From positions 1-64,000 of the IMG/VR virus record IMGVR_UViG_3300017917_001123: a stretch of DNA of 64,000 nt; one strand, 5' to 3'. The position numbers and the translations under genes were made by a program. The notes below the pieces were generated by a model. The model worked only from the letters and a program-made list of their open reading frames with translations, was not told the origin of the DNA and made no database searches. This document shows, in pieces, positions 4,734-54,691 of the stretch; within the stretch, counting starts at the first letter, position 1; each line of letters begins with the position of its first letter.

Positions 4734-5354
4734 TTATAGCTTTTTAATAGCGATTATAATATCGTCTTCTCTACCTTCAGCAATCCGCTTGCCGTAATAG
4801 GTATCGATCTCAAATTTCTCACCAAGCCCGTGTAAATGATTTTCTAAATGCGGAATGAAGTTCTCGGCTGTTTGAGTATTCACTACGTCTTCAATAAAGT
4901 AGACGCCACCCCTGGCTAAACGTGGCCAGTAGTTTTGAAAGGTCTGCCATTGGCTATTTGCCCTATGGTCGCCATCGTCAATAATGAAGTCCATTGTTTC
5001 TTCGCCAAACTGTGCTGCCAATGCTGGATCAAAAGCACTACAATTCCAATATAAACTAATTCGCTGGTCTTGCTCAATTTCCTCTTGGAAAGGTCTTCTC
5101 ACGGCGTAACCTCCAGCAATATCAAAACTGTAGTAATCAAAATCAGTAAAGTACTTGCTCCAAAGATATGCGCTACCGCCAATGCTAATTCCAATTTCTA
5201 ACATACGAATTTCTTCTGTACGCTTTGGTTCGAAATATTTTTCATAGAATGGCAAATAGCTGTGTCCAGAATCTGCGCTCTTGTCGGTAAAATCTAAACT
5301 GGTTTCACCGTATTGTGCTTTAAGTTCTTCGTTGATTTCGTGTAATGTCTTCAT
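4734..5354 (-). CDS. Class I SAM-dependent methyltransferase
   Basis: LEIGISIGGS, DFIIDDGDH, GGVYFIED; start moved to ATG 5354 (TAAATA upstream; longer ORF overlaps a tRNA). Confidence 0.85.
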   Translation of the reverse strand: MKTLHEINEELKAQYGETSLDFTDKSADSGHSYLPFYEKYFEPKRTEEIRMLEIGISIGGSAYLWSKYFTDFDYYSFDIAGGYAVRRPFQEEIEQDQRISLYWNCSAFDPALAAQFGEETMDFIIDDGDHRANSQWQTFQNYWPRLARGGVYFIEDVVNTQTAENFIPHLENHLHGLGEKFEIDTYYGKRIAEGREDDIIIAIKKL

Positions 5355-5381
5355 GCGAATATTTACTGGAGAGTCTAATAC

Positions 5382-5410
5382 TTGATCTTTTTCTTGAGTT
5401 TTCGTATAAT
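5382..5410 (+). promoter_or_regulatory. sigma70-type promoter for aberrant tRNA
   Basis: TTGATC-17-TATAAT, 7 nt before tRNA. Confidence 0.65.
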
Positions 5411-5417
5411 TAACTAT

Positions 5418-5518
5418 GCGGCTGTGAGCAAATAGGCAAAGCTCTCCACCCTTTGGGTCGAGGTCGGACACTGACTTAGTCAACGTCTTTGGAGGTTCAA
5501 GCCCTCCCAGCCGTACCA
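5418..5518 (+). tRNA. Non-canonical type II (Leu-like body) tRNA, collapsed TTT anticodon loop
   Basis: GCGGCTG/CAGCCGT-A-CCA; Leu-like D loop; T arm GGAGG-TTCAAGC-CCTCC; loop CC-TTT-GG; ~30-nt variable arm. Confidence 0.75.
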
Positions 5519-5561
5519 AATTCTTGATTTATAGATTTTTATATCTGTAAATATCCGAGAC

Positions 5562-5637
5562 GCCCTAGTAGCTCAGTTGGTAGAGCAACTGATTTGTAAT
5601 CAGTAGGTCCGCGGTTCGAGTCCGTGCTGGGGCACCA
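5562..5637 (+). tRNA. tRNA-Thr (TGT)
   Basis: Canonical cloverleaf, ACTGA-TT-TGT-AA-TCAGT, ACCA. Confidence 0.96.
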
Positions 5638-7075: not shown

Positions 7076-7149
7076 TCTTGTAATACAATACGCAAGGATT
7101 TATAATATATAAATACATTGTTAATGGTGCCAACAGGGCTGTTAACAAA

Positions 7150-7166
7150 CTTGCTTAATAAGGAGA
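7150..7166 (+). promoter_or_regulatory. ROSE-like RNA thermometer hairpin over dnaK SD
   Basis: CTTGCTT-AAT-AAGGAG, bulged G opposite SD. Confidence 0.55.
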
Positions 7167-7171
7167 AAAAT

Positions 7172-9082
7172 ATGTCAAAAATTATAGGTATTGACCTAGG
7201 TACAACAAACTCTTGCGTGGCTATCATCGATGGCCCAAATGCTAAAGTTATCGAAAACTCAGAAGGCGCAAGAACAACCCCTTCAATTATTGCTTACACT
7301 AACGAAGAAGTGCTCGTTGGCGCAACTGCCAAACGACAAGCAGTAACAAATCCAAAAAATACATTGTACGCCGTTAAGCGTCTTATTGGACGTAAGTTCA
7401 GTGAGAAAGAAGTACAAAAAGACATCGACTTGATGCCTTACAAAATTATTCAAGCAGACAACGGTGATGCTTGGGTAGAAGCAAACGGTCAAAAACTTGC
7501 TCCGCCACAAATTAGTGCTGAGGTTCTTCGCAAGATGAAAAAGACCGCAGAGGATTTTTTAGGTGAAGAAGTTACAAAAGCAGTTATTACAGTTCCAGCA
7601 TACTTTAACGACTCACAAAGACAGGCTACAAAGGACGCTGGTAAGATCGCCGGCTTGGAAGTACTCCGTATTATTAACGAGCCTACTGCGGCAGCTCTTG
7701 CTTATGGTGTTGATAAAGCTGATGGTAAAGACAGGAAAGTTGCTGTTTACGATCTTGGTGGTGGTACATTCGACATTAGCATCATTGAAATCGCGAATGT
7801 CGACGGTGATAAGCAGATTGAAGTTCTAAGCACCAACGGTGACACGTTCTTAGGCGGTGAAGACTTTGACCAACGCATCATGGACTATCTAGTAGCAGAG
7901 TTCAAAAAGGACAACGGCGTTGACCTAAAGAGTGATGTTCTTGCTCTTCAGCGTCTAAAAGAAGCCGCAGAAAAGGCAAAGATCGAATTGTCTAGCTCTG
8001 CTAGCACAGATGTTAACTTGCCTTACATTACTGCCGACGCAAGTGGTCCTAAGCACATGAACGTTAAGATCACTCGTGCTAAGTTTGAAAGTTTAGTTGA
8101 GGATCTAGTAGAACGCAGTCTAGAGCCATGCCGCATTGCACTAAAAGACGCAGGTCTAAGTGCCAGCGACATCGACGAAGTTATCCTAGTCGGTGGCCAG
8201 ACTCGTATGCCTAAGGTACAAGAAGCAGTTGAGAAGTTGTTTGGCAAGGCACCACGTAAGGATGTTAACCCAGACGAAGCAGTTGCTGTCGGCGCCGCAG
8301 TTCAAGGGCAAGTGTTAGGCGGTGGACGCACTGACGTTCTATTGCTTGACGTTACTCCATTGAGTCTTGGTATCGAGACGCAAGGTGGTGTTATGACTAA
8401 GATGATTAAGAAGAATACTACTATTCCGACTAAGCATAGTCAAACATACAGTACTGCCGAAGACAATCAGCCAGCAGTTACAATTAAAGTCTATCAAGGT
8501 GAACGTGACCTAGTTGCTTATAATAAACTATTGGGCGAGTTTAACTTAGAAGGCATTGATCCTGCTCCACGCGGTATGCCTCAAATTGAAGTTACATTCG
8601 ATATCGACGCAAACGGCATTCTTGACGTCCATGCTAAGGATAAGAAAACTGGCAAGGAAAAGAAAATTACTATCAAAGCAAGTTCTGGTCTAAGTGACGC
8701 AGAAATTGAAAAGATGGTACAGGAAGCCGAAGCCAATGCCGAAGCAGATAAAGAGGCAGTTGCCCTAATTAATCTTCGAAACGAAACCGACGTTCTAATC
8801 CACATGACTGAAAAGTTAATGAAGGAATTGGGCGAAAGCGGTGTTTCGCTAGACGAAGAAGATCAGGCAAAAGAGTCAATCGAAAAAGCCAAAGAAGCTC
8901 TAAAAGGCAACAACAAGTCAACTATTGAAAAAGCTCAAGACGAAGTTAAGGAATGGCACAAGAAGTTCCTACAAAAGTCTCAAGAGCAAAATGAGGCCAA
9001 CAAGCAAGAGTCCGAAATTGACAAGGGACAAAAGCCGGGCTACGAAAATGTAGTTGATGCCGAGTTTACGGAGAAATCTTGA
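7172..9082 (+). CDS. dnaK: Hsp70 chaperone DnaK
   Basis: [26 protein letters not shown]-terminal VDAEF; AAGGAG RBS. Confidence 0.97.
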
Positions 9083-15851: not shown

Positions 15852-16523
15852 ATGTACACAAGTGTTTATCGTTCAGCAGGCGAGATTAATACTGCTATGG
15901 CACGTGTCTATGGACACATGGGACTGGCAGTTATTACTTCAATGATTGTTAGTTTCTTTGTTGGCAATAGTGCCGCATTGATGGAGTTTTTCTTTTCTGG
16001 GGCAATGAAGTGGGTAGTTATTTTTGCTCCGCTGGTCGCAATCCTAGGTGTTAGTGTTGCTATGGAAAAAATGAGCAAAAGTGCTCTAACAATTTTCCTA
16101 CACGGTTTTGCCGCATTGATGGGCTTGAGTTTTGCTACAATTTTTGTAGTCTATAACCTAGGTAGCATTGTATCGGCATTCATGGCCGCCGCAGTATTGT
16201 TTGGCACTATGAGCTTCTATGGTTACTTTACTAAAAAGAATCTAGACTCAATTGGCTCATTCTTGCTTGTTGGTCTAATTGCGATCATCATTGCTAGTAT
16301 TATCAACATTTTTATTGGTAGCACAGTATTCCAAATGGTTATTAGTGCGATTGCTGTACTTGTGTTCTTGGGGCTAACTGCCTATGACACACAAAAAATT
16401 CGTGAGTTGGTCAGTGTCGACAGCGACGGTAAAGCAGAGATTATGGGTGCTCTTAGCCTATACCTAGACTTTATTAACTTGTTCTTGTCACTGCTTCAAC
16501 TGTTTGGTGGACGTAAGGATTAA
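15852..16523 (+). CDS. Bax inhibitor-1/YccA family membrane protein
   Basis: 7 TM; AYDTQKI, ALSLYLDFINLF. Confidence 0.92.
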   Translation: MYTSVYRSAGEINTAMARVYGHMGLAVITSMIVSFFVGNSAALMEFFFSGAMKWVVIFAPLVAILGVSVAMEKMSKSALTIFLHGFAALMGLSFATIFVVYNLGSIVSAFMAAAVLFGTMSFYGYFTKKNLDSIGSFLLVGLIAIIIASIINIFIGSTVFQMVISAIAVLVFLGLTAYDTQKIRELVSVDSDGKAEIMGALSLYLDFINLFLSLLQLFGGRKD

Positions 16524-28867: not shown

Positions 28868-29602
28868 ATGCTGAAAATAAAAAATCTAACCGCAGTAGCA
28901 CACGAACAACAAGTACTAACTGACATCAACTTACAAGTCGAAGAAGACGAAGTCCATGCGATCATTGGCCCAGAAAAAGCTGGAAAAACAGCCCTAATGT
29001 ACGCACTTGTTGGGTTACCTTATATAGAGGTAGCTGAAGGAACTATACACTATAAACGTAAAAAAATAAACGCTATGCCTATGCATGAGCGTAGTTTGAG
29101 CGGCATTGTTGGTGTATTTCAAGAAATGATCGAAGTGCCTAATTTAACAAATTGGGAGCTCTTAGAAGCTGTTTTAAAATATCGCAAAGATCCAAGAAAC
29201 ATAGACGATCTAAAAGAACTATATGTAACTCATTGCTTAATGCTAGGGCTAGATCCAATCCACGGTGATTTAGAAGCATCAAGCGACACAATGGACTATG
29301 AGCAAGCAGTTAAAAACGAACTGCTGATAATGTTCATGCTAAACCCTAAACTAGCACTAATTGATAACTTTGATGAAAAGTTAGACGAAGAAAATAAAAA
29401 GTTGCTAGCCGAAAGCATTGCTGATATGGCACACGCCGGTGGCCGAGCAACTATTGTATTTTCAAAAAACAAAGCAGTATTAGAAACAATCAATCCTACT
29501 CATGTACACGTTATGGTTGATGGAAAGCTAGTACTATCTGGTGGAAAAGAATTATTACAAAGGATAGAAGAAGATGGGTATTCAGAGCTTTCTGCAAGCT
29601 GA
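28868..29602 (+). CDS. SufC-like ABC ATPase (degenerate motifs)
   Basis: EVHAIIGPEKAGKT, PTHVHVMVDGKLVLSGG.EL...E..GY; Walker B DN, no signature or His. Confidence 0.75.
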   Translation: MLKIKNLTAVAHEQQVLTDINLQVEEDEVHAIIGPEKAGKTALMYALVGLPYIEVAEGTIHYKRKKINAMPMHERSLSGIVGVFQEMIEVPNLTNWELLEAVLKYRKDPRNIDDLKELYVTHCLMLGLDPIHGDLEASSDTMDYEQAVKNELLIMFMLNPKLALIDNFDEKLDEENKKLLAESIADMAHAGGRATIVFSKNKAVLETINPTHVHVMVDGKLVLSGGKELLQRIEEDGYSELSAS

Positions 29603-30404
29603 AAAGGGTGATCCGGATTGGCTGTTTAGTCCAGATGAATATTTTGGAAAACAATTTAAACTATCGGACGCAAATACTATAGAGCTAAAGGACGGAAGGA
29701 CCGATAGCATTACTCTACGCCTAAGTCCTAACGAATCAGGAATGCTAGCCAAGCATCTTCGTATTGATGTTAGGGAAGAAGCAACTCTCGACTTAATTGT
29801 TATTAACGAATCTAGTCCCAAAACACAGCAGGTCTTTATCTACGATATTAAAATTCGTGAAGGCGGCCTTTTAAACCTAGGGATCTTTGCCAAGGGCGGA
29901 AAGTTTAACAAACATATATTTCAAGTAAGCATTGAAGACGGTGGAAATTTTGCCAGCTATGGTTACATTAGCAACAACGACGGCGGCGATACTGAGGTCA
30001 TTACCAAAGTCTTTCAACAGGGCGTACATTCATTGTGTACGCAGTTAATTGGAGCCCAGGCCGGAAAAGACAGTCAAACAGTCTATCAAGGAATGGTTCG
30101 AATTGACGGTGAAGCAGAACTTGCTGAAGCTGGCTTAGAAAGCGTTAACATTGTTACAGGAGATAACGGTCGTTGCTGGAGTAGACCAGAAGTGTTGAGC
30201 GAAACAATTACAGCAAAGACCCGATACGGAAGCCAGACAACTTGTTTAGATAGCAACATTACCTATTATCTAGCAAGTAAGGGGTTGCCACCAGAAGTAT
30301 CTCAAAAGGTTGTACTTAACAGCTTTCAAACTCCAATCTTTAACCTTGTTAAACAGGAAGATATTCGAGAAGAAGTAGAACAGTTATTCAATACGCAAGA
30401 ATAA
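29574..30404 (+). CDS. SufD/SufB-like beta-helix protein
   Basis: YQG.VRI..A..A, SRPE, YYLASKGL. Confidence 0.7.
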   Translation: MGIQSFLQAEKGDPDWLFSPDEYFGKQFKLSDANTIELKDGRTDSITLRLSPNESGMLAKHLRIDVREEATLDLIVINESSPKTQQVFIYDIKIREGGLLNLGIFAKGGKFNKHIFQVSIEDGGNFASYGYISNNDGGDTEVITKVFQQGVHSLCTQLIGAQAGKDSQTVYQGMVRIDGEAELAEAGLESVNIVTGDNGRCWSRPEVLSETITAKTRYGSQTTCLDSNITYYLASKGLPPEVSQKVVLNSFQTPIFNLVKQEDIREEVEQLFNTQE

Positions 30405-51090: not shown

Positions 51091-51105
51091 TATTTGGCGG
51101 AAAAT

Positions 51106-51912
51106 ATGGATTACTATGAAACATTAGGCGTGCCTAAAGGGGCGTCAGAAGAAGAAATTAAAAAAGCCTATCGCAAATTGGCTATGAAGCATCATCCCGA
51201 CCGAGGTGGGGATGCTTCTAAATTTAAAGAAATTGAAGAAGCGTACAGAATACTAGGCGACCCAAATGCTAGAGCAGAGTACGATCAACCAAAACAATAC
51301 TCGTCTAGAGCAGACGGATTCGGAGTCCCTCCAGGCTTTGAAGGATTCTTCCATCACTTTGGAGGAAACTTTAGCGACTTGTTTCGTCCACAACGACCCC
51401 GAAATAGAGATTTAAATTTCCACACTCGTATTACACTAGAAGATGCGTTCTACGGTAAAGAGCTTGTGGTTAATTTCTTTAAAGCAAACGGTCAAGAAAA
51501 AATCCTTAATGTAAAAATTCCACAGGGCATTCAAAACGGAATGACTCTGCGCTTACAAGGTGTAGGCGATGATAGTTTACCGCAAGCACAGGTTGGAGAT
51601 GTACTAATTACGGTCGAAGTAGTACAAAATAGAGAATTCAAACGTCAAGGGGATGATTTAATCAAAGAGGTTGAAATTAACTGTATCGATGCTATGCTTG
51701 GTAAAGAGATACTAATTACAACTATTGATGGAAAAACACTAACAGGTCGTGTTCCTCCGGGATCGCAACCAGATAGTATCCTAAACATTCCCGGACAAGG
51801 AATGCCCAACATGAATAACCCAAACAGTCGTGGTAGATTGTTGCTACACATAAGAATGACTGTTCCGCAGTTAACTGAAGATCAAAAAGAACAACTTAAG
51901 AAGATATTTTAA
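51106..51912 (+). CDS. dnaJ: DnaJ-class co-chaperone (no zinc finger)
   Basis: [13 protein letters not shown]-terminal GDLI..I..AMLG domain. Confidence 0.9.
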
Positions 51913-52422
51913 ATGCTAGATATAGTTAAATTCCCAAATCCAATTTTAAGACAGAAGATGCCGGACTTCGACTTTTCAAATCCAGTTATGGACCCAAAAG
52001 AACTGGAGAAAGAAATGATCGAAACAATGTTAAAGAACTACGGAATGGGTCTGGCCGCCAATCAAGTAGGAATAGCTACACGGGTGTTTACTATGGGACA
52101 CCCAACAATGCCAGAAAATGCCAAAGCGTTTTTTAATCCAGAAATTGTAGCAAACACAGAATCTGTCAAAGATTTGGAAGAAGGATGCTTGAGTTTTCCC
52201 GGAATTTATGTTAATATTAAACGTCCTACAGCCATAAAGGCTCGTTGGCAAAATAGTTCCGGTGAATGGGAGGAGGGAGAGTTTGAAGGATACGAATGTA
52301 AATGCTTCTTACATGAATTCGATCATTTGGAAGGAATTGTTTTTTCAGATCGAGTCAGTCAGTTAAAATGGGCTATGGCAATTAAAAAACTTAAATCTAA
52401 TAAGAGGAAACACAATGCTTGA
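51913..52422 (+). CDS. def: Peptide deformylase
   Basis: GMGLAANQVG, EGCLS, HEFDH. Confidence 0.95.
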   Translation: MLDIVKFPNPILRQKMPDFDFSNPVMDPKELEKEMIETMLKNYGMGLAANQVGIATRVFTMGHPTMPENAKAFFNPEIVANTESVKDLEEGCLSFPGIYVNIKRPTAIKARWQNSSGEWEEGEFEGYECKCFLHEFDHLEGIVFSDRVSQLKWAMAIKKLKSNKRKHNA

Positions 52423-54691
52423 ACCAAGCCAAGACCTAGAGAAAATTTTTGAACGTGCTATTAAGCTCGCAATGAGCCATAAGCACGAATACATTACACT
52501 AGAGCATTTCTTATACGGTCTTCTCATAGATCCTAAGTTTGAAAAAACTCTTACAAACTTTGGAACAAATGTTTCCGACCTAGTAAAAGATATCGAGCTA
52601 TATGTAAGCTCAGAGCTTAACGATATCAAAATTGAAGAGGAAATTAAACCAAAGAAAACACACAGCATGGAACGTATGCTGAATCGTGCTTTCACGCAAG
52701 TATTGTTCAGCGGTCGCTCTACTATTGAGCCCGTTGATTGTTTTATTAGTTTGTTCAGCGAAAAGAAATCATTTGCTGTCTATAGCCTACGCAAGGCAAA
52801 GATCGATAAAGACAAGTTTATTGAATATATTAATCAAGAAGCGATCGAAGAAGAAGCAACAGAAGGCGAAGGTACTCCAAGCCCGCAACTCGAACGTCTG
52901 CTTGTTCAGTATTGCCAGAACCTTACTAAGAAGGCAAAAGAGAAAAAGATCGATCCAGTTATTGGCCGCGAAAAAGAAATTGAGGAAATGCAACTTATCC
53001 TTGCTCGCCGTACTAAGTCTAATGTTATGCTTATCGGTGATCCAGGCGTAGGTAAGACTGCTATCGCAGAAGGCCTTGCTAAGAAGATTGTCGAAGGCAA
53101 TGTTCCTAAGTACATTCAAGATCACACAGTTTACAACCTAGACATTAGCTCTATGCTTGCGGGCAGTAAGTATCGCGGTGATTTTGAAGAACGTCTCAAG
53201 ATGGTCATCACTGCCCTTGAGAAGAAAAAGAAATGTATTCTGTTTATTGACGAGGCACACATGATGAGTGGTGCTGGCGCAGTAAGCGGTGGTTCAAACG
53301 ACATGGCTAATATGCTCAAGCCAGCACTTGGCAAGGGCACTATTAAAGTTATCGCAAGCACAACGTGGGAAGAATTCCGCAAGCACTTTGAAAAGGATCG
53401 TGCGCTGATGCGTCGATTCCAGCGTGTTGTTGTAGACGAGCCTAATGAAGCAACTGCTATTAAGATCCTTAAAGGTCTTAAGAAGTATTACGAAAAGCAC
53501 CACAACGTTAAAATTACTAATCAAGCAATTATCGATGCTGTTAAGTATAGCGTCAAGTATATTAGTGATCGTCATTTGCCCGATAAAGCAATTGACTTGA
53601 TTGATTGTGCCTGTGCTCGCTTTAAGGTCAAAGACGAAGAAGGCGGTATTGTTGACCATGACGAGATTGTGTTCGAAGTGGCTAAGATTGCTAACTTGCC
53701 GTTAGATCAAATTGCCGCTAAGGAAAACAAGAACCTTAAGGACATGGATAAAAACATGCGAGGTAAGGTGTTTGGTCAAGAAAAAGCAATCGATGCTCTA
53801 CTTGACAAGATTTATATCGCACAAGCAGGTTTGAAATCTATTAACAAACCAGTTGGTAACTTCTTATTCGTTGGACCTACGGGTTGCGGTAAGACTGAAA
53901 CTGCTAAAGTATTAGCAGAGTCTATGGGTGTTCAATTGGTTCGCTTTGATATGAGCGAATTCCAAGAACAACATTCTGTAGCAAAGTTCATTGGTGCGCC
54001 TCCGGGATATGTTGGATTTGAGGACAATGCCGGCCAACTTATTACTAAACTACAAGAACATCCTAACTGTATTCTATTGCTTGACGAAATCGAAAAAGCA
54101 CACCCAAGCGTAAGCCAAGTACTGCTAGGATTGATGGATAACGGATTTGTAACTGGTTCTAATGGTAAGAAGGCAGATGGTCGTAACGCAATCATCATTC
54201 TTACTTCTAACCTAGGCGCATCAGATGCTGAAAAGAACGCTGTTGGTTTCGGTAAGATGGAACGTGATTACGATAACAAAGATGCTGTTAATCGTTTCTT
54301 TGCTCCAGAATTCCGCAATCGTTTAGACGGCATTATCCAGTTCAACAAACTCGGTCAAGATACAATGATTAAGATTGTTAAGAAGTTTATCGACGAACTT
54401 AATGCTCTTATTAAAGATAAGAATATTCATGTTAAACCAGACATGGCAGCTCTTGAGTATCTTGTTAAGAAAGGCTTTAATCCTAAAATGGGTGCTCGTC
54501 CGTTGGCTCGGGTTATCGATGAAGAAATTAAAAAGCCTCTATCACGAGAAATCCTGTTTGGCAAATTGTCAAACGGTGGAGTCGTAAACTTGACGTTTAA
54601 AGACGACAAGTTTGTGTTTGAGCTAGTTGAAGTATTGTCAATCGACAAAGCAGTAACGTCAGAAGAGGCAGATGAAGAAACTGTTGACTAA
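52415..54691 (+). CDS. clpA: ClpA-type AAA+ unfoldase
   Basis: HEYITLEH N-domain, two Walker A motifs, VGF ClpP-docking loop, no M domain. Confidence 0.92.
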   Translation: MLEPSQDLEKIFERAIKLAMSHKHEYITLEHFLYGLLIDPKFEKTLTNFGTNVSDLVKDIELYVSSELNDIKIEEEIKPKKTHSMERMLNRAFTQVLFSGRSTIEPVDCFISLFSEKKSFAVYSLRKAKIDKDKFIEYINQEAIEEEATEGEGTPSPQLERLLVQYCQNLTKKAKEKKIDPVIGREKEIEEMQLILARRTKSNVMLIGDPGVGKTAIAEGLAKKIVEGNVPKYIQDHTVYNLDISSMLAGSKYRGDFEERLKMVITALEKKKKCILFIDEAHMMSGAGAVSGGSNDMANMLKPALGKGTIKVIASTTWEEFRKHFEKDRALMRRFQRVVVDEPNEATAIKILKGLKKYYEKHHNVKITNQAIIDAVKYSVKYISDRHLPDKAIDLIDCACARFKVKDEEGGIVDHDEIVFEVAKIANLPLDQIAAKENKNLKDMDKNMRGKVFGQEKAIDALLDKIYIAQAGLKSINKPVGNFLFVGPTGCGKTETAKVLAESMGVQLVRFDMSEFQEQHSVAKFIGAPPGYVGFEDNAGQLITKLQEHPNCILLLDEIEKAHPSVSQVLLGLMDNGFVTGSNGKKADGRNAIIILTSNLGASDAEKNAVGFGKMERDYDNKDAVNRFFAPEFRNRLDGIIQFNKLGQDTMIKIVKKFIDELNALIKDKNIHVKPDMAALEYLVKKGFNPKMGARPLARVIDEEIKKPLSREILFGKLSNGGVVNLTFKDDKFVFELVEVLSIDKAVTSEEADEETVD

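What the first reader, a model, noticed from the sequence alone, without database searches (positions are those of the whole stretch)
5418..5518. Leu-bodied tRNA with a zipped-shut TTT anticodon loop and oversized variable arm, under its own promoter
Seen: intact acceptor stem, A73, CCA, Leu-like D loop and T arm, but positions 32-38 read CC-TTT-GG (C33 instead of invariant U33; C32-G38 and C33-G37 can pair), a C-C mismatch in the stem and a ~30-nt variable arm. A TTGATC-17-TATAAT promoter lies just upstream. Known: bacterial LeuRS largely ignores the anticodon. Inference: a chargeable but non-decoding tRNA (Leu donor for non-ribosomal transferases, or decoy for tRNA-Lys anticodon nucleases), or a Lys-to-Leu mistranslator. 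Preservation of everything except the decoding arm argues against simple decay.
Basis: partly seen in the sequence, partly recalled or inferred. Interest (0 to 1): 0.78.

Follow-up and report, generated by a model that had tools for sequence, protein, structure and literature searches.

The report
Phage tRNA-Leu mimic without an anticodon
This is a real, conserved phage gene for an RNA that keeps the amino-acid-accepting half of a leucine tRNA but has its codon-reading loop replaced by a closed hairpin, so it cannot read codons and must do some other, still unknown, job.

Summary
Window 5418-5518 (+) folds as a class-II tRNA-Leu body: 7-bp acceptor stem, A73, CCA, Leu-type D arm, canonical T arm. 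The anticodon arm is zipped into a 7-bp stem with a UUU triloop, the extra arm is a 23-nt hairpin, and a sigma70-type promoter ends 7 nt before G1.

It is not a one-off. I found 31 distinct homologues in uncultured phage contigs. Of 26 modelled pairs, 95% of cells pair and 18 pairs show compensatory changes. U8, A73 and the T-loop core are invariant.

In every member the anticodon position holds a closed helix of 14-35 nt. Loops are 3-4 nt in 26 of 31 and their sequence is not conserved; UUU is confined to a subclade. The Lys-anticodon readings (mistranslator, PrrC/RloC decoy) therefore fail.

A promoter with its -10 box ending 5-8 nt before the 5' end occurs in 29 of 30 mimics but only 11 of 372 ordinary tRNAs in the same loci. 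Encoded CCA is lost in 8 of 31 mimics against 6 of 374 ordinary tRNAs.

Best reading: a non-decoding tRNA-Leu mimic with a 5'-triphosphate end that acts off the ribosome. LeuRS is the most likely partner, but this is unproven. Rivals are a Ro60/Y-RNA-like role and a cis-acting 5' module. No Rfam family or cultured-phage match exists.

The parts
5382..5387 (+). -35 hexamer TTGATC
   Evidence: Promoter scan. An equivalent TTGNNN/TTGACA box lies 16-17 nt upstream of the -10 box in the 22 homologues printed; promoter scores for all 30 testable homologues are.
5405..5410 (+). -10 hexamer TATAAT, ending 7 nt before G1, so transcription should start at or next to the mature 5' end
   Evidence: 29 of 30 mimics, but only 11 of 372 ordinary tRNAs in the same loci, match the sigma70 consensus at 9 or more of 12 positions with the -10 box ending 5-8 nt before the 5' end.
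5418..5518 (+). The whole tRNA-Leu mimic (101 nt including the encoded CCA)
   Evidence: Covariance model R1 scores it 105.7 bits, while ordinary tRNA-Leu score 52 bits or less.
5418..5424 (+). Acceptor stem, 5' strand; pairs with 5508-5514
   Evidence: 100% of cells paired, and 6 of 7 pairs show compensatory changes across 31 sequences.
5427..5443 (+). Leu-type D arm: 3-bp stem and 11-nt loop with A14, A15, G18, G19, A21
   Evidence: U8, A10 and G11 are invariant; conserved positions in the D loop are shown in the alignment. The layout matches phage tRNA-Leu(UAA).
5444..5462 (+). Hairpin 1, at the anticodon-arm position: 7 bp plus a C.C mismatch (5447/5459) and a UUU triloop (5452-5454). There is no 7-nt anticodon loop and no U33.
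   Evidence: Fold. The family survey gives closed helices of 14-35 nt, with loops of 3 nt in 9 members, 4 nt in 17, and 5-9 nt in 5; loop sequence is not conserved.
5466..5488 (+). Hairpin 2, at the variable-arm position: 4-bp outer stem, 2x2 AC/AC internal loop, 4-bp inner stem, UUA triloop (5476-5478)
   Evidence: All four inner pairs and 3 of 4 outer pairs show compensatory changes. Every member has a triloop (UUA, AUA, AUU or CUA).
5491..5507 (+). T arm: GGAGG, UUCAAGC, CCUCC
   Evidence: 100% of cells paired; 3 of 5 pairs show compensatory changes; the T-loop core is invariant in the alignment.
5508..5518 (+). Acceptor stem 3' strand (5508-5514), discriminator A73 (5515), encoded CCA (5516-5518)
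   Evidence: A73 is A in 31 of 31 members. CCA is encoded in 23 of 31, against 368 of 374 ordinary tRNAs in the same loci.
5562..5637 (+). tRNA-Thr(UGU), 43 nt downstream on the same strand with no terminator-like site between; probably co-transcribed
   Evidence: The same order (mimic, then tRNA-Thr(UGU)) is seen in L003, L077, L180, L181, L188 and L183.
4734..5354 (-). Divergently oriented methyltransferase gene. It is context only, but it shows that the long minus-strand ORF 4734-5519 overlapping the RNA is an artefact of an upstream TTG codon.
   Evidence: ORF list. Pfam Methyltransf_24 and phrog_21658 hits. The homologue in L003 starts at the equivalent ATG.

Best explanation
This is a stand-alone gene for a non-decoding tRNA-Leu mimic.

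Shown:
- It belongs to a conserved phage RNA family that keeps the tRNA L-shape core, a 7-bp acceptor stem, the A73 discriminator and a long extra arm.
- The anticodon arm is always replaced by a closed helix, so the RNA cannot pair with a codon.
- A host-type sigma70 promoter is placed so that transcription should begin at the mature 5' end.

Inferred:
- The RNA is made early and in quantity with a 5'-triphosphate, and needs no RNase P step.
- It folds like the top half of tRNA-Leu.
- It works off the ribosome by being bound, and probably processed or charged, by proteins that read only that half of tRNA-Leu.
- LeuRS is the prime candidate, because bacterial LeuRS uses A73 plus the U8-A14, G18-U55 and G19-C56 core and ignores the anticodon arm.

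Open: whether the output is a Leu-charged donor, a sink that titrates LeuRS or another tRNA-binding factor, or an uncharged scaffold.
For: - Family and structure: 31 distinct homologues; 95% of 801 cells paired; 18 of 26 pairs with compensatory change; 0 of 500 shuffles reach these values; slid controls give 30-46% paired.
- Invariant positions include U8, A73 and the T-loop core.
- Origin from tRNA-Leu: ordinary tRNA-Leu share the acceptor sequence and D-arm layout.
- No anticodon loop in any member.
- The promoter placement is specific to this gene: 29 of 30 mimics against 11 of 372 ordinary tRNAs; individual promoters are listed.
- Encoded CCA in 23 of 31 members, against 1 in 64 expected by chance.
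- LeuRS rules come from the literature. A73 and the tertiary core are critical and the anticodon arm is dispensable for aminoacylation (PMC2377443). E. coli Leu identity rests essentially on A73 and A14 (PMC9976931).
- These phages also carry normal tRNA-Leu, so the mimic is an extra gene and not a replacement.
Against: - No expression or charging data could be obtained; RNA runs covered only the neighbouring tRNA-Thr.
- CCA was lost in 8 of 31 mimics, representing at least four lineages, while 368 of 374 ordinary tRNAs in the same loci keep it. The acceptor end is thus under weaker constraint than in real tRNAs.
- G18 is replaced by A in the L077/L180/L181/L188 subgroup.
- The conserved shape of hairpin 2 (internal loop plus N-U-W triloop) is not explained by LeuRS and points to another partner.
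- No tRNA-dependent transferase, LeuRS or ClpS/Aat gene was found in the 64-kb window.
Confidence: 0.45

Rival explanations
1. Y-RNA-like role. The mimic would be a tRNA-shaped partner of the phage's Ro60 protein (like bacterial YrlA), tethering Ro60 to a nuclease or another effector in an RNA repair and quality-control island.
For: - Relatives of this phage encode a Ro60 homologue. The DUF2828+DUF7788 / phrog_850 protein was modelled, and its 13 best PDB matches are all Ro60/TROVE structures, E-values 3e-7 to 1.6e-3.
- The mimic lies within 6 kb of that gene on the same strand in 9 of the 20 loci that have at least 5 kb on both sides.
- Polynucleotide-kinase-like and phosphoesterase genes are nearby.
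- YrlA RNAs also keep D, T, acceptor-like and V arms and carry a helix where the anticodon arm would be (PMC4201824).
- The 3' strand of hairpin 1 reads GGGUCGAGG, with the C mismatched. This resembles the Ro-binding GNCGAAN0-1G / GGUCCGA motifs and the GGUCGAAGGAC found in a candidate Y RNA of related phages.
Against: - No Ro60 gene lies in the 64-kb window.
- The distance to Ro60 varies from -5.2 to +3.9 kb. It is explained by both genes lying in or beside the tRNA island.
- A different, roughly 200-nt structured RNA sits directly upstream of Ro60 in 44 loci and is the more obvious Y RNA.
- The CGA-type motif occurs in only some mimics.
- The RNA ends lie at the acceptor stem, not in the putative Ro-binding helix.
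- Invariance of A73 is not explained.
Confidence: 0.15
2. Cis-acting 5' module. The tRNA-shaped start of the transcript would serve as a base-paired, triphosphorylated 5' cap that blocks 5'-end-dependent decay. It could also act as a punctuation signal where RNase Z or RNase E releases the downstream tRNAs or mRNA.
For: - The mimic is almost always (29 of 30) the first element of a transcription unit, with the start site at its first paired base.
- It is followed within 6-45 nt by same-strand tRNAs or by an ORF with a ribosome-binding site.
- In seven loci from divergent lineages a homologous small secreted HExxH protein gene starts 24-30 nt after it.
- CCA is dispensable in several lineages while A73 is kept.
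Against: - A simple hairpin would do for 5' protection. Invariance of the D-loop/T-loop tertiary core, the long extra arm and A73 is far more than RNase Z or 5' protection needs.
- Downstream genes differ between lineages.
- Downstream tRNAs are excised by RNase P anyway and gain nothing from the module.
Confidence: 0.15
3. Decoy or sponge for a host anti-phage factor that attacks tRNAs through the acceptor end or elbow (for example nucleotidyltransferase, pyrophosphokinase or acetyltransferase toxins), or, for a tRNA-Lys anticodon nuclease.
For: - The host-type promoter suggests early, strong expression.
- The tRNA top half is conserved.
- The gene sits in a tRNA and RNA-repair island typical of counter-defence (PMC7824862).
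Against: - The anticodon-nuclease version fails. There is no anticodon loop, and UUU is not conserved.
- A general acceptor-end decoy would have to compete with the whole tRNA pool.
- Loss of CCA in 8 of 31 members argues against CCA-targeting toxins as the universal target.
- No toxin partner is known.
Confidence: 0.1
4. A decoding tRNA after all: tRNA-Pro(GGG) as ARAGORN calls it, a Lys(UUU)-reading Leu mistranslator, or a tRNA whose real anticodon lies in hairpin 2 (CUUAG resembles C32-G36 of tRNA-Leu(UAG)).
For: - The ARAGORN call.
- GACUUAGUC was identical in the first 13 homologues found.
Against: - ARAGORN gives no plus-strand call for the element in the homologues scanned.
- Hairpin 1 varies from 14 to 35 nt, with 3- or 4-nt loops in 26 of 31 members.
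- The CUUAG invariance was produced by my own search patterns. Members found with the covariance model have AUA, AUU or CUA triloops.
- Hairpin 2 is 7-10 bp long with a triloop, which is incompatible with an anticodon arm.
Confidence: 0.02
5. A decaying tRNA-Leu pseudogene or an attachment-site remnant.
For: Weak Rfam score (30.4 bits) and an aberrant anticodon arm.
Against: Compensatory changes in every helix, invariant tertiary-core positions, a conserved dedicated promoter, and presence across divergent phage lineages.
Confidence: 0.02

Closest known systems
Canonical bacterial or phage class-II tRNA-Leu
   Same: - 7/5 acceptor/T architecture and the A73 discriminator.
- U8, A14, A15...U48, G18, G19 and the T-loop UUCRA.
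- A 3-bp D stem with an 11-nt loop, and a long extra arm in the same topological position.
- The acceptor sequence GCGGCUG is shared with many cellular tRNA-Leu.
   Different: - No 7-nt anticodon loop and no U33; the anticodon arm is a closed helix of variable length.
- The extra arm is longer (21-27 nt), with an internal loop and a triloop.
- It is transcribed without a 5' leader.
- CCA is lost in a quarter of members.
YrlA-class bacterial and phage Y RNAs (tRNA-mimicking partners of Ro60; Chen et al. 2014, PMC4201824)
   Same: - A tRNA-derived mimic that keeps the D/T elbow, an acceptor-like helix and a V arm.
- A helix instead of an anticodon loop.
- Occurs in phages.
- Relatives carry a Ro60 gene in the same region and on the same strand.
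   Different: - In YrlA the chain ends lie in the Ro-binding stem and the acceptor-like helix is closed. Here the ends are at the acceptor stem with A73 (and usually CCA), and the 'anticodon' helix is closed.
- There is no exact GNCGAA motif.
- There is no Ro60 gene in the window.
- A separate RNA lies next to Ro60.
tRNA-like domain of tmRNA
   Same: A chargeable tRNA top half that has no anticodon and is used outside normal decoding. Related phages also encode tmRNA.
   Different: - tmRNA has Ala identity (G3.U70), a reduced D arm, pseudoknots and a tag reading frame, and it needs SmpB.
- None of these is present here. ARAGORN finds no tmRNA at this site.
Non-translational or aberrant tRNA species: Staphylococcus tRNA-Gly used for cell-wall synthesis and Bacillus cereus 'tRNA-Other' (both recalled from memory, not tested here)
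   Same: Extra tRNA-like genes diverted from ribosomal decoding to another use.
   Different: As far as I recall, those keep a normal-sized anticodon loop and are ordinary processed tRNAs. This family has lost the loop and has a leaderless promoter.
Leu-accepting tRNAs with non-Leu anticodons (nematode nev-tRNAs, PMC3333845; human/yeast mistranslating tRNA-Leu variants, PMC11028032)
   Same: They exploit the fact that LeuRS does not read the anticodon.
   Different: They retain a working anticodon loop and decode on the ribosome; this RNA cannot.

Membership tests
Decoding (elongator) tRNA, Rfam RF00005 | Cloverleaf that reaches the family's score threshold | tested here: inconclusive
   Not reported at gathering threshold with default filters. 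Scores 30.4 bits against a 29-bit cut-off with permissive filters, with 26 nt treated as an insertion.
Decoding (elongator) tRNA, Rfam RF00005 | 5-bp anticodon stem closed by a 7-nt loop with U33 and an accessible triplet | tested here: not met
   The window has C32-G38 and C33-G37 pairs and a UUU triloop. In the family, 26 of 31 members have 3- or 4-nt loops and the helix is 14-35 nt long.
LeuRS substrate (bacterial tRNA-Leu identity set) | Discriminator A73 | tested here: met
   A at this position in 31 of 31 members. The rule is taken from PMC2377443 and PMC9976931.
LeuRS substrate (bacterial tRNA-Leu identity set) | Tertiary core U8-A14, G18-U55, G19-C56 (and A15-U48) | tested here: met
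   All the nucleotides are present in the window. U8 and the T-loop core are invariant. G18 is A in the L077 subgroup. Presence of the bases is shown; formation of the tertiary pairs is inferred.
LeuRS substrate (bacterial tRNA-Leu identity set) | 3'-terminal CCA available for aminoacylation | tested here: inconclusive
   Encoded in the window and in 23 of 31 members, absent in 8. It could be added after transcription, which was not testable.
LeuRS substrate (bacterial tRNA-Leu identity set) | Actual leucylation by LeuRS | not testable with these tools
   Needs an enzyme assay.
YrlA / Y RNA (Ro60 partner) | Encoded within about 4 kb of a Ro60 (TROVE) gene on the same strand | tested here: not met
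   No Ro60 homologue lies in the 64-kb window (tblastn). In relatives, 9 of 20 fully flanked Ro60 loci have the mimic within 6 kb on the same strand.
YrlA / Y RNA (Ro60 partner) | Ro-binding motif GNCGAAN0-1G in the terminal stem formed by the 5' and 3' ends | tested here: not met
   The window has GUCGAGG in the 3' strand of an internal, loop-closed helix. The motif varies in the family. The RNA ends are at the acceptor stem.
tmRNA | Ala-type acceptor (G3.U70) plus a tag reading frame and pseudoknots | tested here: not met
   Pair 3-70 is G-C or A-U. The RNA is 101 nt with no reading frame, and ARAGORN makes no tmRNA call.
tRNA-Sec / allo-tRNA (8/4 or 9/3 acceptor/T branch) | 12-bp acceptor/T branch split 8/4 or 9/3 | tested here: not met
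   The split is 7 bp acceptor plus 5 bp T stem in all members.
tRNA pseudogene | Substitutions that ignore base pairing and hit all arms alike | tested here: not met
   95% of cells paired, 121 doubly changed cells, 0 of 500 shuffles as high.

The most novel reading that the evidence does not exclude
A previously undescribed class of phage small RNA: a leaderless, 5'-triphosphorylated tRNA-Leu mimic without an anticodon. Either LeuRS charges it and it carries leucine to a non-ribosomal acceptor, or it is a circularly permuted, acceptor-open counterpart of YrlA that links the phage's Ro60/RNA-repair island to the tRNA machinery. In both cases a virus would be diverting tRNA identity away from decoding.
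Probability: 0.3. Interest if true: 0.85.

Novelty: new variant of a known kind. Interest (0 to 1): 0.7.

Why it matters
Phage tRNA genes are usually explained by codon usage or by replacing tRNAs that host defences cleave. This tRNA gene has been rebuilt so that it cannot decode. Yet its enzyme-facing half is kept unchanged across a large, diverse clade of uncultured aquatic phages, and it has its own consensus promoter.

That makes a concrete, testable case for a non-translational use of tRNA identity by viruses. The sequence can be transcribed and offered to LeuRS, EF-Tu, RNase Z, the CCA-adding enzyme and phage Ro60.

It also matters for annotation. ARAGORN either calls it 'tRNA-Pro(GGG)' or misses it, so tRNA counts and inferred codon supplementation for these phages will be wrong. 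A covariance model separates the family cleanly from ordinary tRNA-Leu: all but one member score 54 bits or more (one scores 50.8), while ordinary tRNA-Leu reach 52 bits at most.

Tried and rejected
- **Cultured relatives.** blastn of the element and two divergent homologues against 50,697 phage records found nothing. Megablast of 12 kb of context matched only tRNA-Thr.
- **Expression.** RNA runs that share words with the region cover only the conserved tRNA-Thr, and depth over 5380-5559 is zero. This says nothing either way, because the runs come from other environments.
- **Intron or bulge-helix-bulge reading.** The symmetric internal loop of hairpin 2 is not a BHB motif. No excision restores a 5-bp/7-nt anticodon arm in the window or in L003 (hand analysis).
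- **Hairpin 2 as the true anticodon arm.** CUUAG equals C32-G36 of tRNA-Leu(UAG) and looked invariant in the first 13 homologues. That came from my search patterns, which contained CTTAG. Members found with the covariance model have other triloops.
- **ARAGORN's Pro(GGG) register.** It is not reproduced in the homologues scanned.
- **N-end-rule idea** (Leu donor for an L/F-transferase feeding ClpAP). The window has a ClpA-sized AAA+ protein, and some relatives have ClpP about 400 nt downstream of the mimic. The gene next to the ClpA-like gene is peptide deformylase, not ClpS, and no transferase was found.
- **Ro60 in this phage.** I tried to reach the other end of the 331-kb contig through the window's first 30 bases. 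This retrieved only a second 42-kb contig holding six more tRNAs.
- **Genome scan.** Searching 185,579 species' genomes for the hairpin-2/T-arm pattern gave only chance matches and two tRNA-like fragments.
- **Neighbour analysis.** All element-bearing loci belong to one broad syntenic phage clade, so shared neighbours do not single out a partner.

Full report
**What is at the site.** Window 5418-5518 (+) was read directly.

- The element has a 7-bp acceptor stem whose first pair is G1.U72, followed by U8-G9.
- Its D arm has a 3-bp stem and an 11-nt loop carrying A14, A15, G18, G19 and A21.
- Hairpin 1 occupies the anticodon-arm position (5444-5462).
- A 3-nt linker leads to a 23-nt hairpin 2 in the variable-arm position (5466-5488).
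- After UU comes a canonical T arm (GGAGG/UUCAAGC/CCUCC), then the acceptor 3' strand, A73 and CCA.

The minimum-free-energy fold gives exactly this picture. It closes standard positions 32-38 (CC-UUU-GG) into two C-G pairs around a UUU triloop and leaves a C.C mismatch in the stem.

ARAGORN reports a 101-nt 'tRNA-Pro(ggg)' in another register. Rfam's tRNA model misses the element at default settings and gives 30.4 bits with permissive filters; no other Rfam family matches.

The promoter TTGATC-17-TATAAT (5382-5410) is the best sigma70-like site in the surrounding 1.5 kb and ends 7 nt before G1.

**Context.** The window is the first 64 kb of a 331,570-bp IMG/VR contig from a pond metagenome. 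It is a phage with bacterial-type promoters.

- It encodes DnaK, DnaJ, peptide deformylase, a ClpA-sized AAA+ protein, SufC/SufBD, PhoH, 2OG-Fe(II) oxygenases and methyltransferases.
- The element lies between a divergent methyltransferase gene (4734-5354, minus strand) and tRNA-Thr(UGU) at 5562-5637, with no terminator-like site between them.
- The covariance model finds only this one copy in the window.

**Homologues.**

- A neighbour-protein search found a related contig (76% amino-acid identity) with the same gene order and a 97-nt homologue.
- Pattern scans of metagenome and viral contigs added more. The same metagenome scan showed that many ordinary bacterial tRNA-Leu share the GCGGCUG/CAGCCGC acceptor stem, A73 and the D-arm layout, so the body derives from tRNA-Leu.
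- A covariance model built from 12 sequences then found divergent members that my patterns could not.

The total is 31 distinct sequences. All but one score 54-109 bits (one scores 50.8), against 52 bits or less for ordinary tRNA-Leu. No cultured phage has the element.

**Structure is under selection.** On the 31-sequence alignment:

- 95% of 801 cells form standard pairs.
- 18 of 26 pairs show compensatory changes, spread over 121 cells.
- None of 500 shuffles reaches these values, and sliding the 3' partners drops pairing to 30-46%.
- Six of seven acceptor pairs, three of five T-stem pairs and seven of eight hairpin-2 pairs show compensatory changes.
- Invariant positions include U8, A73 and the T-loop core.

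This rules out a decaying pseudogene.

**The decoding arm.** Hairpin 1 is a closed helix in every member, 14-35 nt long.

- Loop lengths are 4 nt in 17 members, 3 nt in 9, and 5, 6, 7 or 9 nt in the other five.
- Loop sequences are unrelated. They include the stable tetraloops GGGA, GUGA, GAAA and UUCG.
- UUU or UUUG occurs only in the window's subclade.

No conserved anticodon of any kind exists, so the RNA cannot be a Lys-to-Leu mistranslator or a tRNA-Lys anticodon-nuclease decoy.

I first thought hairpin 2 carried an invariant CUUAG, which matches C32-G36 of tRNA-Leu(UAG). That invariance came from my own search patterns. Members found with the covariance model have AUA, AUU or CUA triloops. 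What hairpin 2 does conserve is its shape: 7-10 bp (6 bp in one member), usually with an internal loop or bulge, closed by an N-U-W triloop.

**The promoter.** Twenty-nine of 30 testable members match the sigma70 consensus at 9-12 of 12 positions, many as TTGACA-17-TATAAT, with the -10 box ending 5-8 nt before the first nucleotide of the acceptor stem. Only 11 of 372 ordinary tRNAs in the same loci do so.

The RNA is thus the first product of its transcription unit. It should carry a 5'-triphosphate and need no RNase P step. This is inferred from sequence and has not been measured.

Downstream, within 6-45 nt and on the same strand, lie tRNAs or an ORF with a ribosome-binding site. In seven loci from divergent lineages that ORF is a homologous small secreted protein with a GHExxHCFQGxWH motif.

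**The 3' end.** A73 is invariant, and CCA is encoded in 23 of 31 members. Ordinary tRNAs in the same loci encode CCA in 368 of 374 cases. The eight CCA-less mimics belong to at least four lineages whose other tRNAs all, or nearly all, keep CCA. The acceptor end therefore matters, but less strictly than in real tRNAs.

**Mechanism.** Bacterial LeuRS relies on A73 and the tertiary core (U8-A14, G18-U55, G19-C56) and on the orientation of the extra arm. The anticodon arm is dispensable for charging (PMC2377443; PMC9976931). The family conserves these features and discards the rest.

The best-supported reading is a tRNA-Leu mimic that cannot decode and acts off the ribosome through proteins that read the top half of tRNA-Leu. 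LeuRS is the leading candidate. I put this at about 0.45, with actual leucylation at no better than even odds because of the CCA losses and the unexplained conservation of hairpin-2 shape.

**Rivals.**

- *Y-RNA-like partner of Ro60.* Relatives encode a DUF2828/DUF7788 protein whose model matches only Ro60 structures at the top of the list. The mimic lies within 6 kb on the same strand in 9 of 20 fully flanked Ro60 loci. Hairpin 1's 3' strand (GGGUCGAGG, with the C mismatched) recalls Ro-binding motifs. Against this, the window has no Ro60 and the linkage is explained by both genes lying beside the tRNA island. A separate structured RNA of about 200 nt sits directly upstream of Ro60 in 44 loci and is the likelier Y RNA.
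- *Cis-acting 5' module for transcript protection or punctuation.* This fits the leaderless design and the CCA losses. It does not explain the invariant tertiary core.
- *Sponge for acceptor-end toxins.* Possible, but nothing supports it directly.

**Novelty.** No Rfam family matches the element or the ten related loci scanned, and no cultured-phage sequence matches it. I found no description of such an RNA in the papers searched. It is a new family within the known kind 'tRNA mimics'. Its closest relatives are YrlA in concept and tRNA-Leu in sequence.

Noticed in passing
L251:5701-5905 (+), and the equivalent position about 100-300 nt upstream of the Ro60 gene in 43 other loci (e.g. L322:5701-5906, L289:5714-5905): A conserved structured non-coding RNA of about 200 nt lies directly upstream of the phage Ro60 gene. 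RNAalifold predicts 41 pairs, 22 of them with compensatory changes. Some copies contain GGUCGAAGGAC, which fits the Ro-binding GNCGAA motif. It is a likely phage Y RNA and has no Rfam match.
   Followed up: partly
L227:2491-3903 (-), L181:30-1433 (+), L247:11358-12782 (-); more than 565 viral contigs: The phage protein annotated only as DUF2828+DUF7788 / phrog_850 'RNA-binding protein' is a Ro60 (TROVE+vWA) homologue. Its AlphaFold model's 13 best PDB matches are all Ro60/TROVE structures, including the Thermus phage phiLo protein. It is highly conserved, at 81-100% identity among the 80 best loci.
   Followed up: yes
L203, L204, L208, L210, L211, L216-L218, L221, L224, L226 and others; L331:663-739: Many phage contigs carry 77-nt tRNA-Leu(UAG) or tRNA-Leu(GAG) genes with a Leu-type D arm and A73 but only a 4-nt variable loop. 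These are type-I-shaped tRNA-Leu, like those reported in Streptomyces (PMC6614811).
   Followed up: no
L207:11414-11859, L223:13045-13489, L242:12402-12787, L234:3622-4067: Related phages encode permuted (two-piece type) tmRNA genes, with tags ending in ...YALAA, a few kb downstream of the mimic.
   Followed up: no
L207:8593-8940, L223:9954-10292, L242:7668-7997, L179:9133-9444, L322:11380-11721, L292:4904-5233, L314:4557-4898: A small protein of 103-115 aa has a predicted signal peptide, conserved cysteines and a C-terminal GHExxHCFQGxWH (zinc-protease-like) motif. Its gene starts 24-30 nt after the mimic in divergent lineages. It has no Pfam family and is not found in the window.
   Followed up: partly
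L180:1061-3154, L242:6469-7496, L207:7937-8407, L204:1166-2594: A cassette of RNA-repair type genes lies beside the tRNA island and, in some contigs, immediately upstream of the mimic's promoter. It comprises a metallophosphoesterase (phrog_547), a dual-specificity-phosphatase-like protein and an AAA_33 polynucleotide-kinase-like protein.
   Followed up: partly
window 7118-9082, 51094-51912, 51913-52422, 52415-54691, 28868-30404, 15852-16523: The phage carries a proteostasis and translation set: DnaK, DnaJ, peptide deformylase, a 758-aa ClpA/ClpB-type AAA+ protein and SufC/SufBD. It also encodes a Bax1-inhibitor-family membrane protein.
   Followed up: no
L331 (contig IMGVR_UViG_3300017917_002134), 1-1037: A second contig from the same sample shares the first 30 bases of the window and continues with six more tRNA genes (Glu, Arg, Arg, Leu, Ile, Thr). 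It is either the missing junction of this genome or a close strain.
   Followed up: partly
L077:3292-3383 (-) and L138:4377-4468 (+): ARAGORN calls a spurious 92-nt 'tRNA-Arg(tcg)' on the strand opposite the mimic, and elsewhere misses the mimic altogether. Automatic tRNA counts for these phages are unreliable at this gene.
   Followed up: no
L190:349-462, L198:1-40 (bacterial MAG contigs): These are tRNA-like fragments with a 5-bp stem and an ACUUAGU loop (C at position 33) but no matching acceptor strand. Their origin is unclear, and they are probably unrelated to the family.
   Followed up: no
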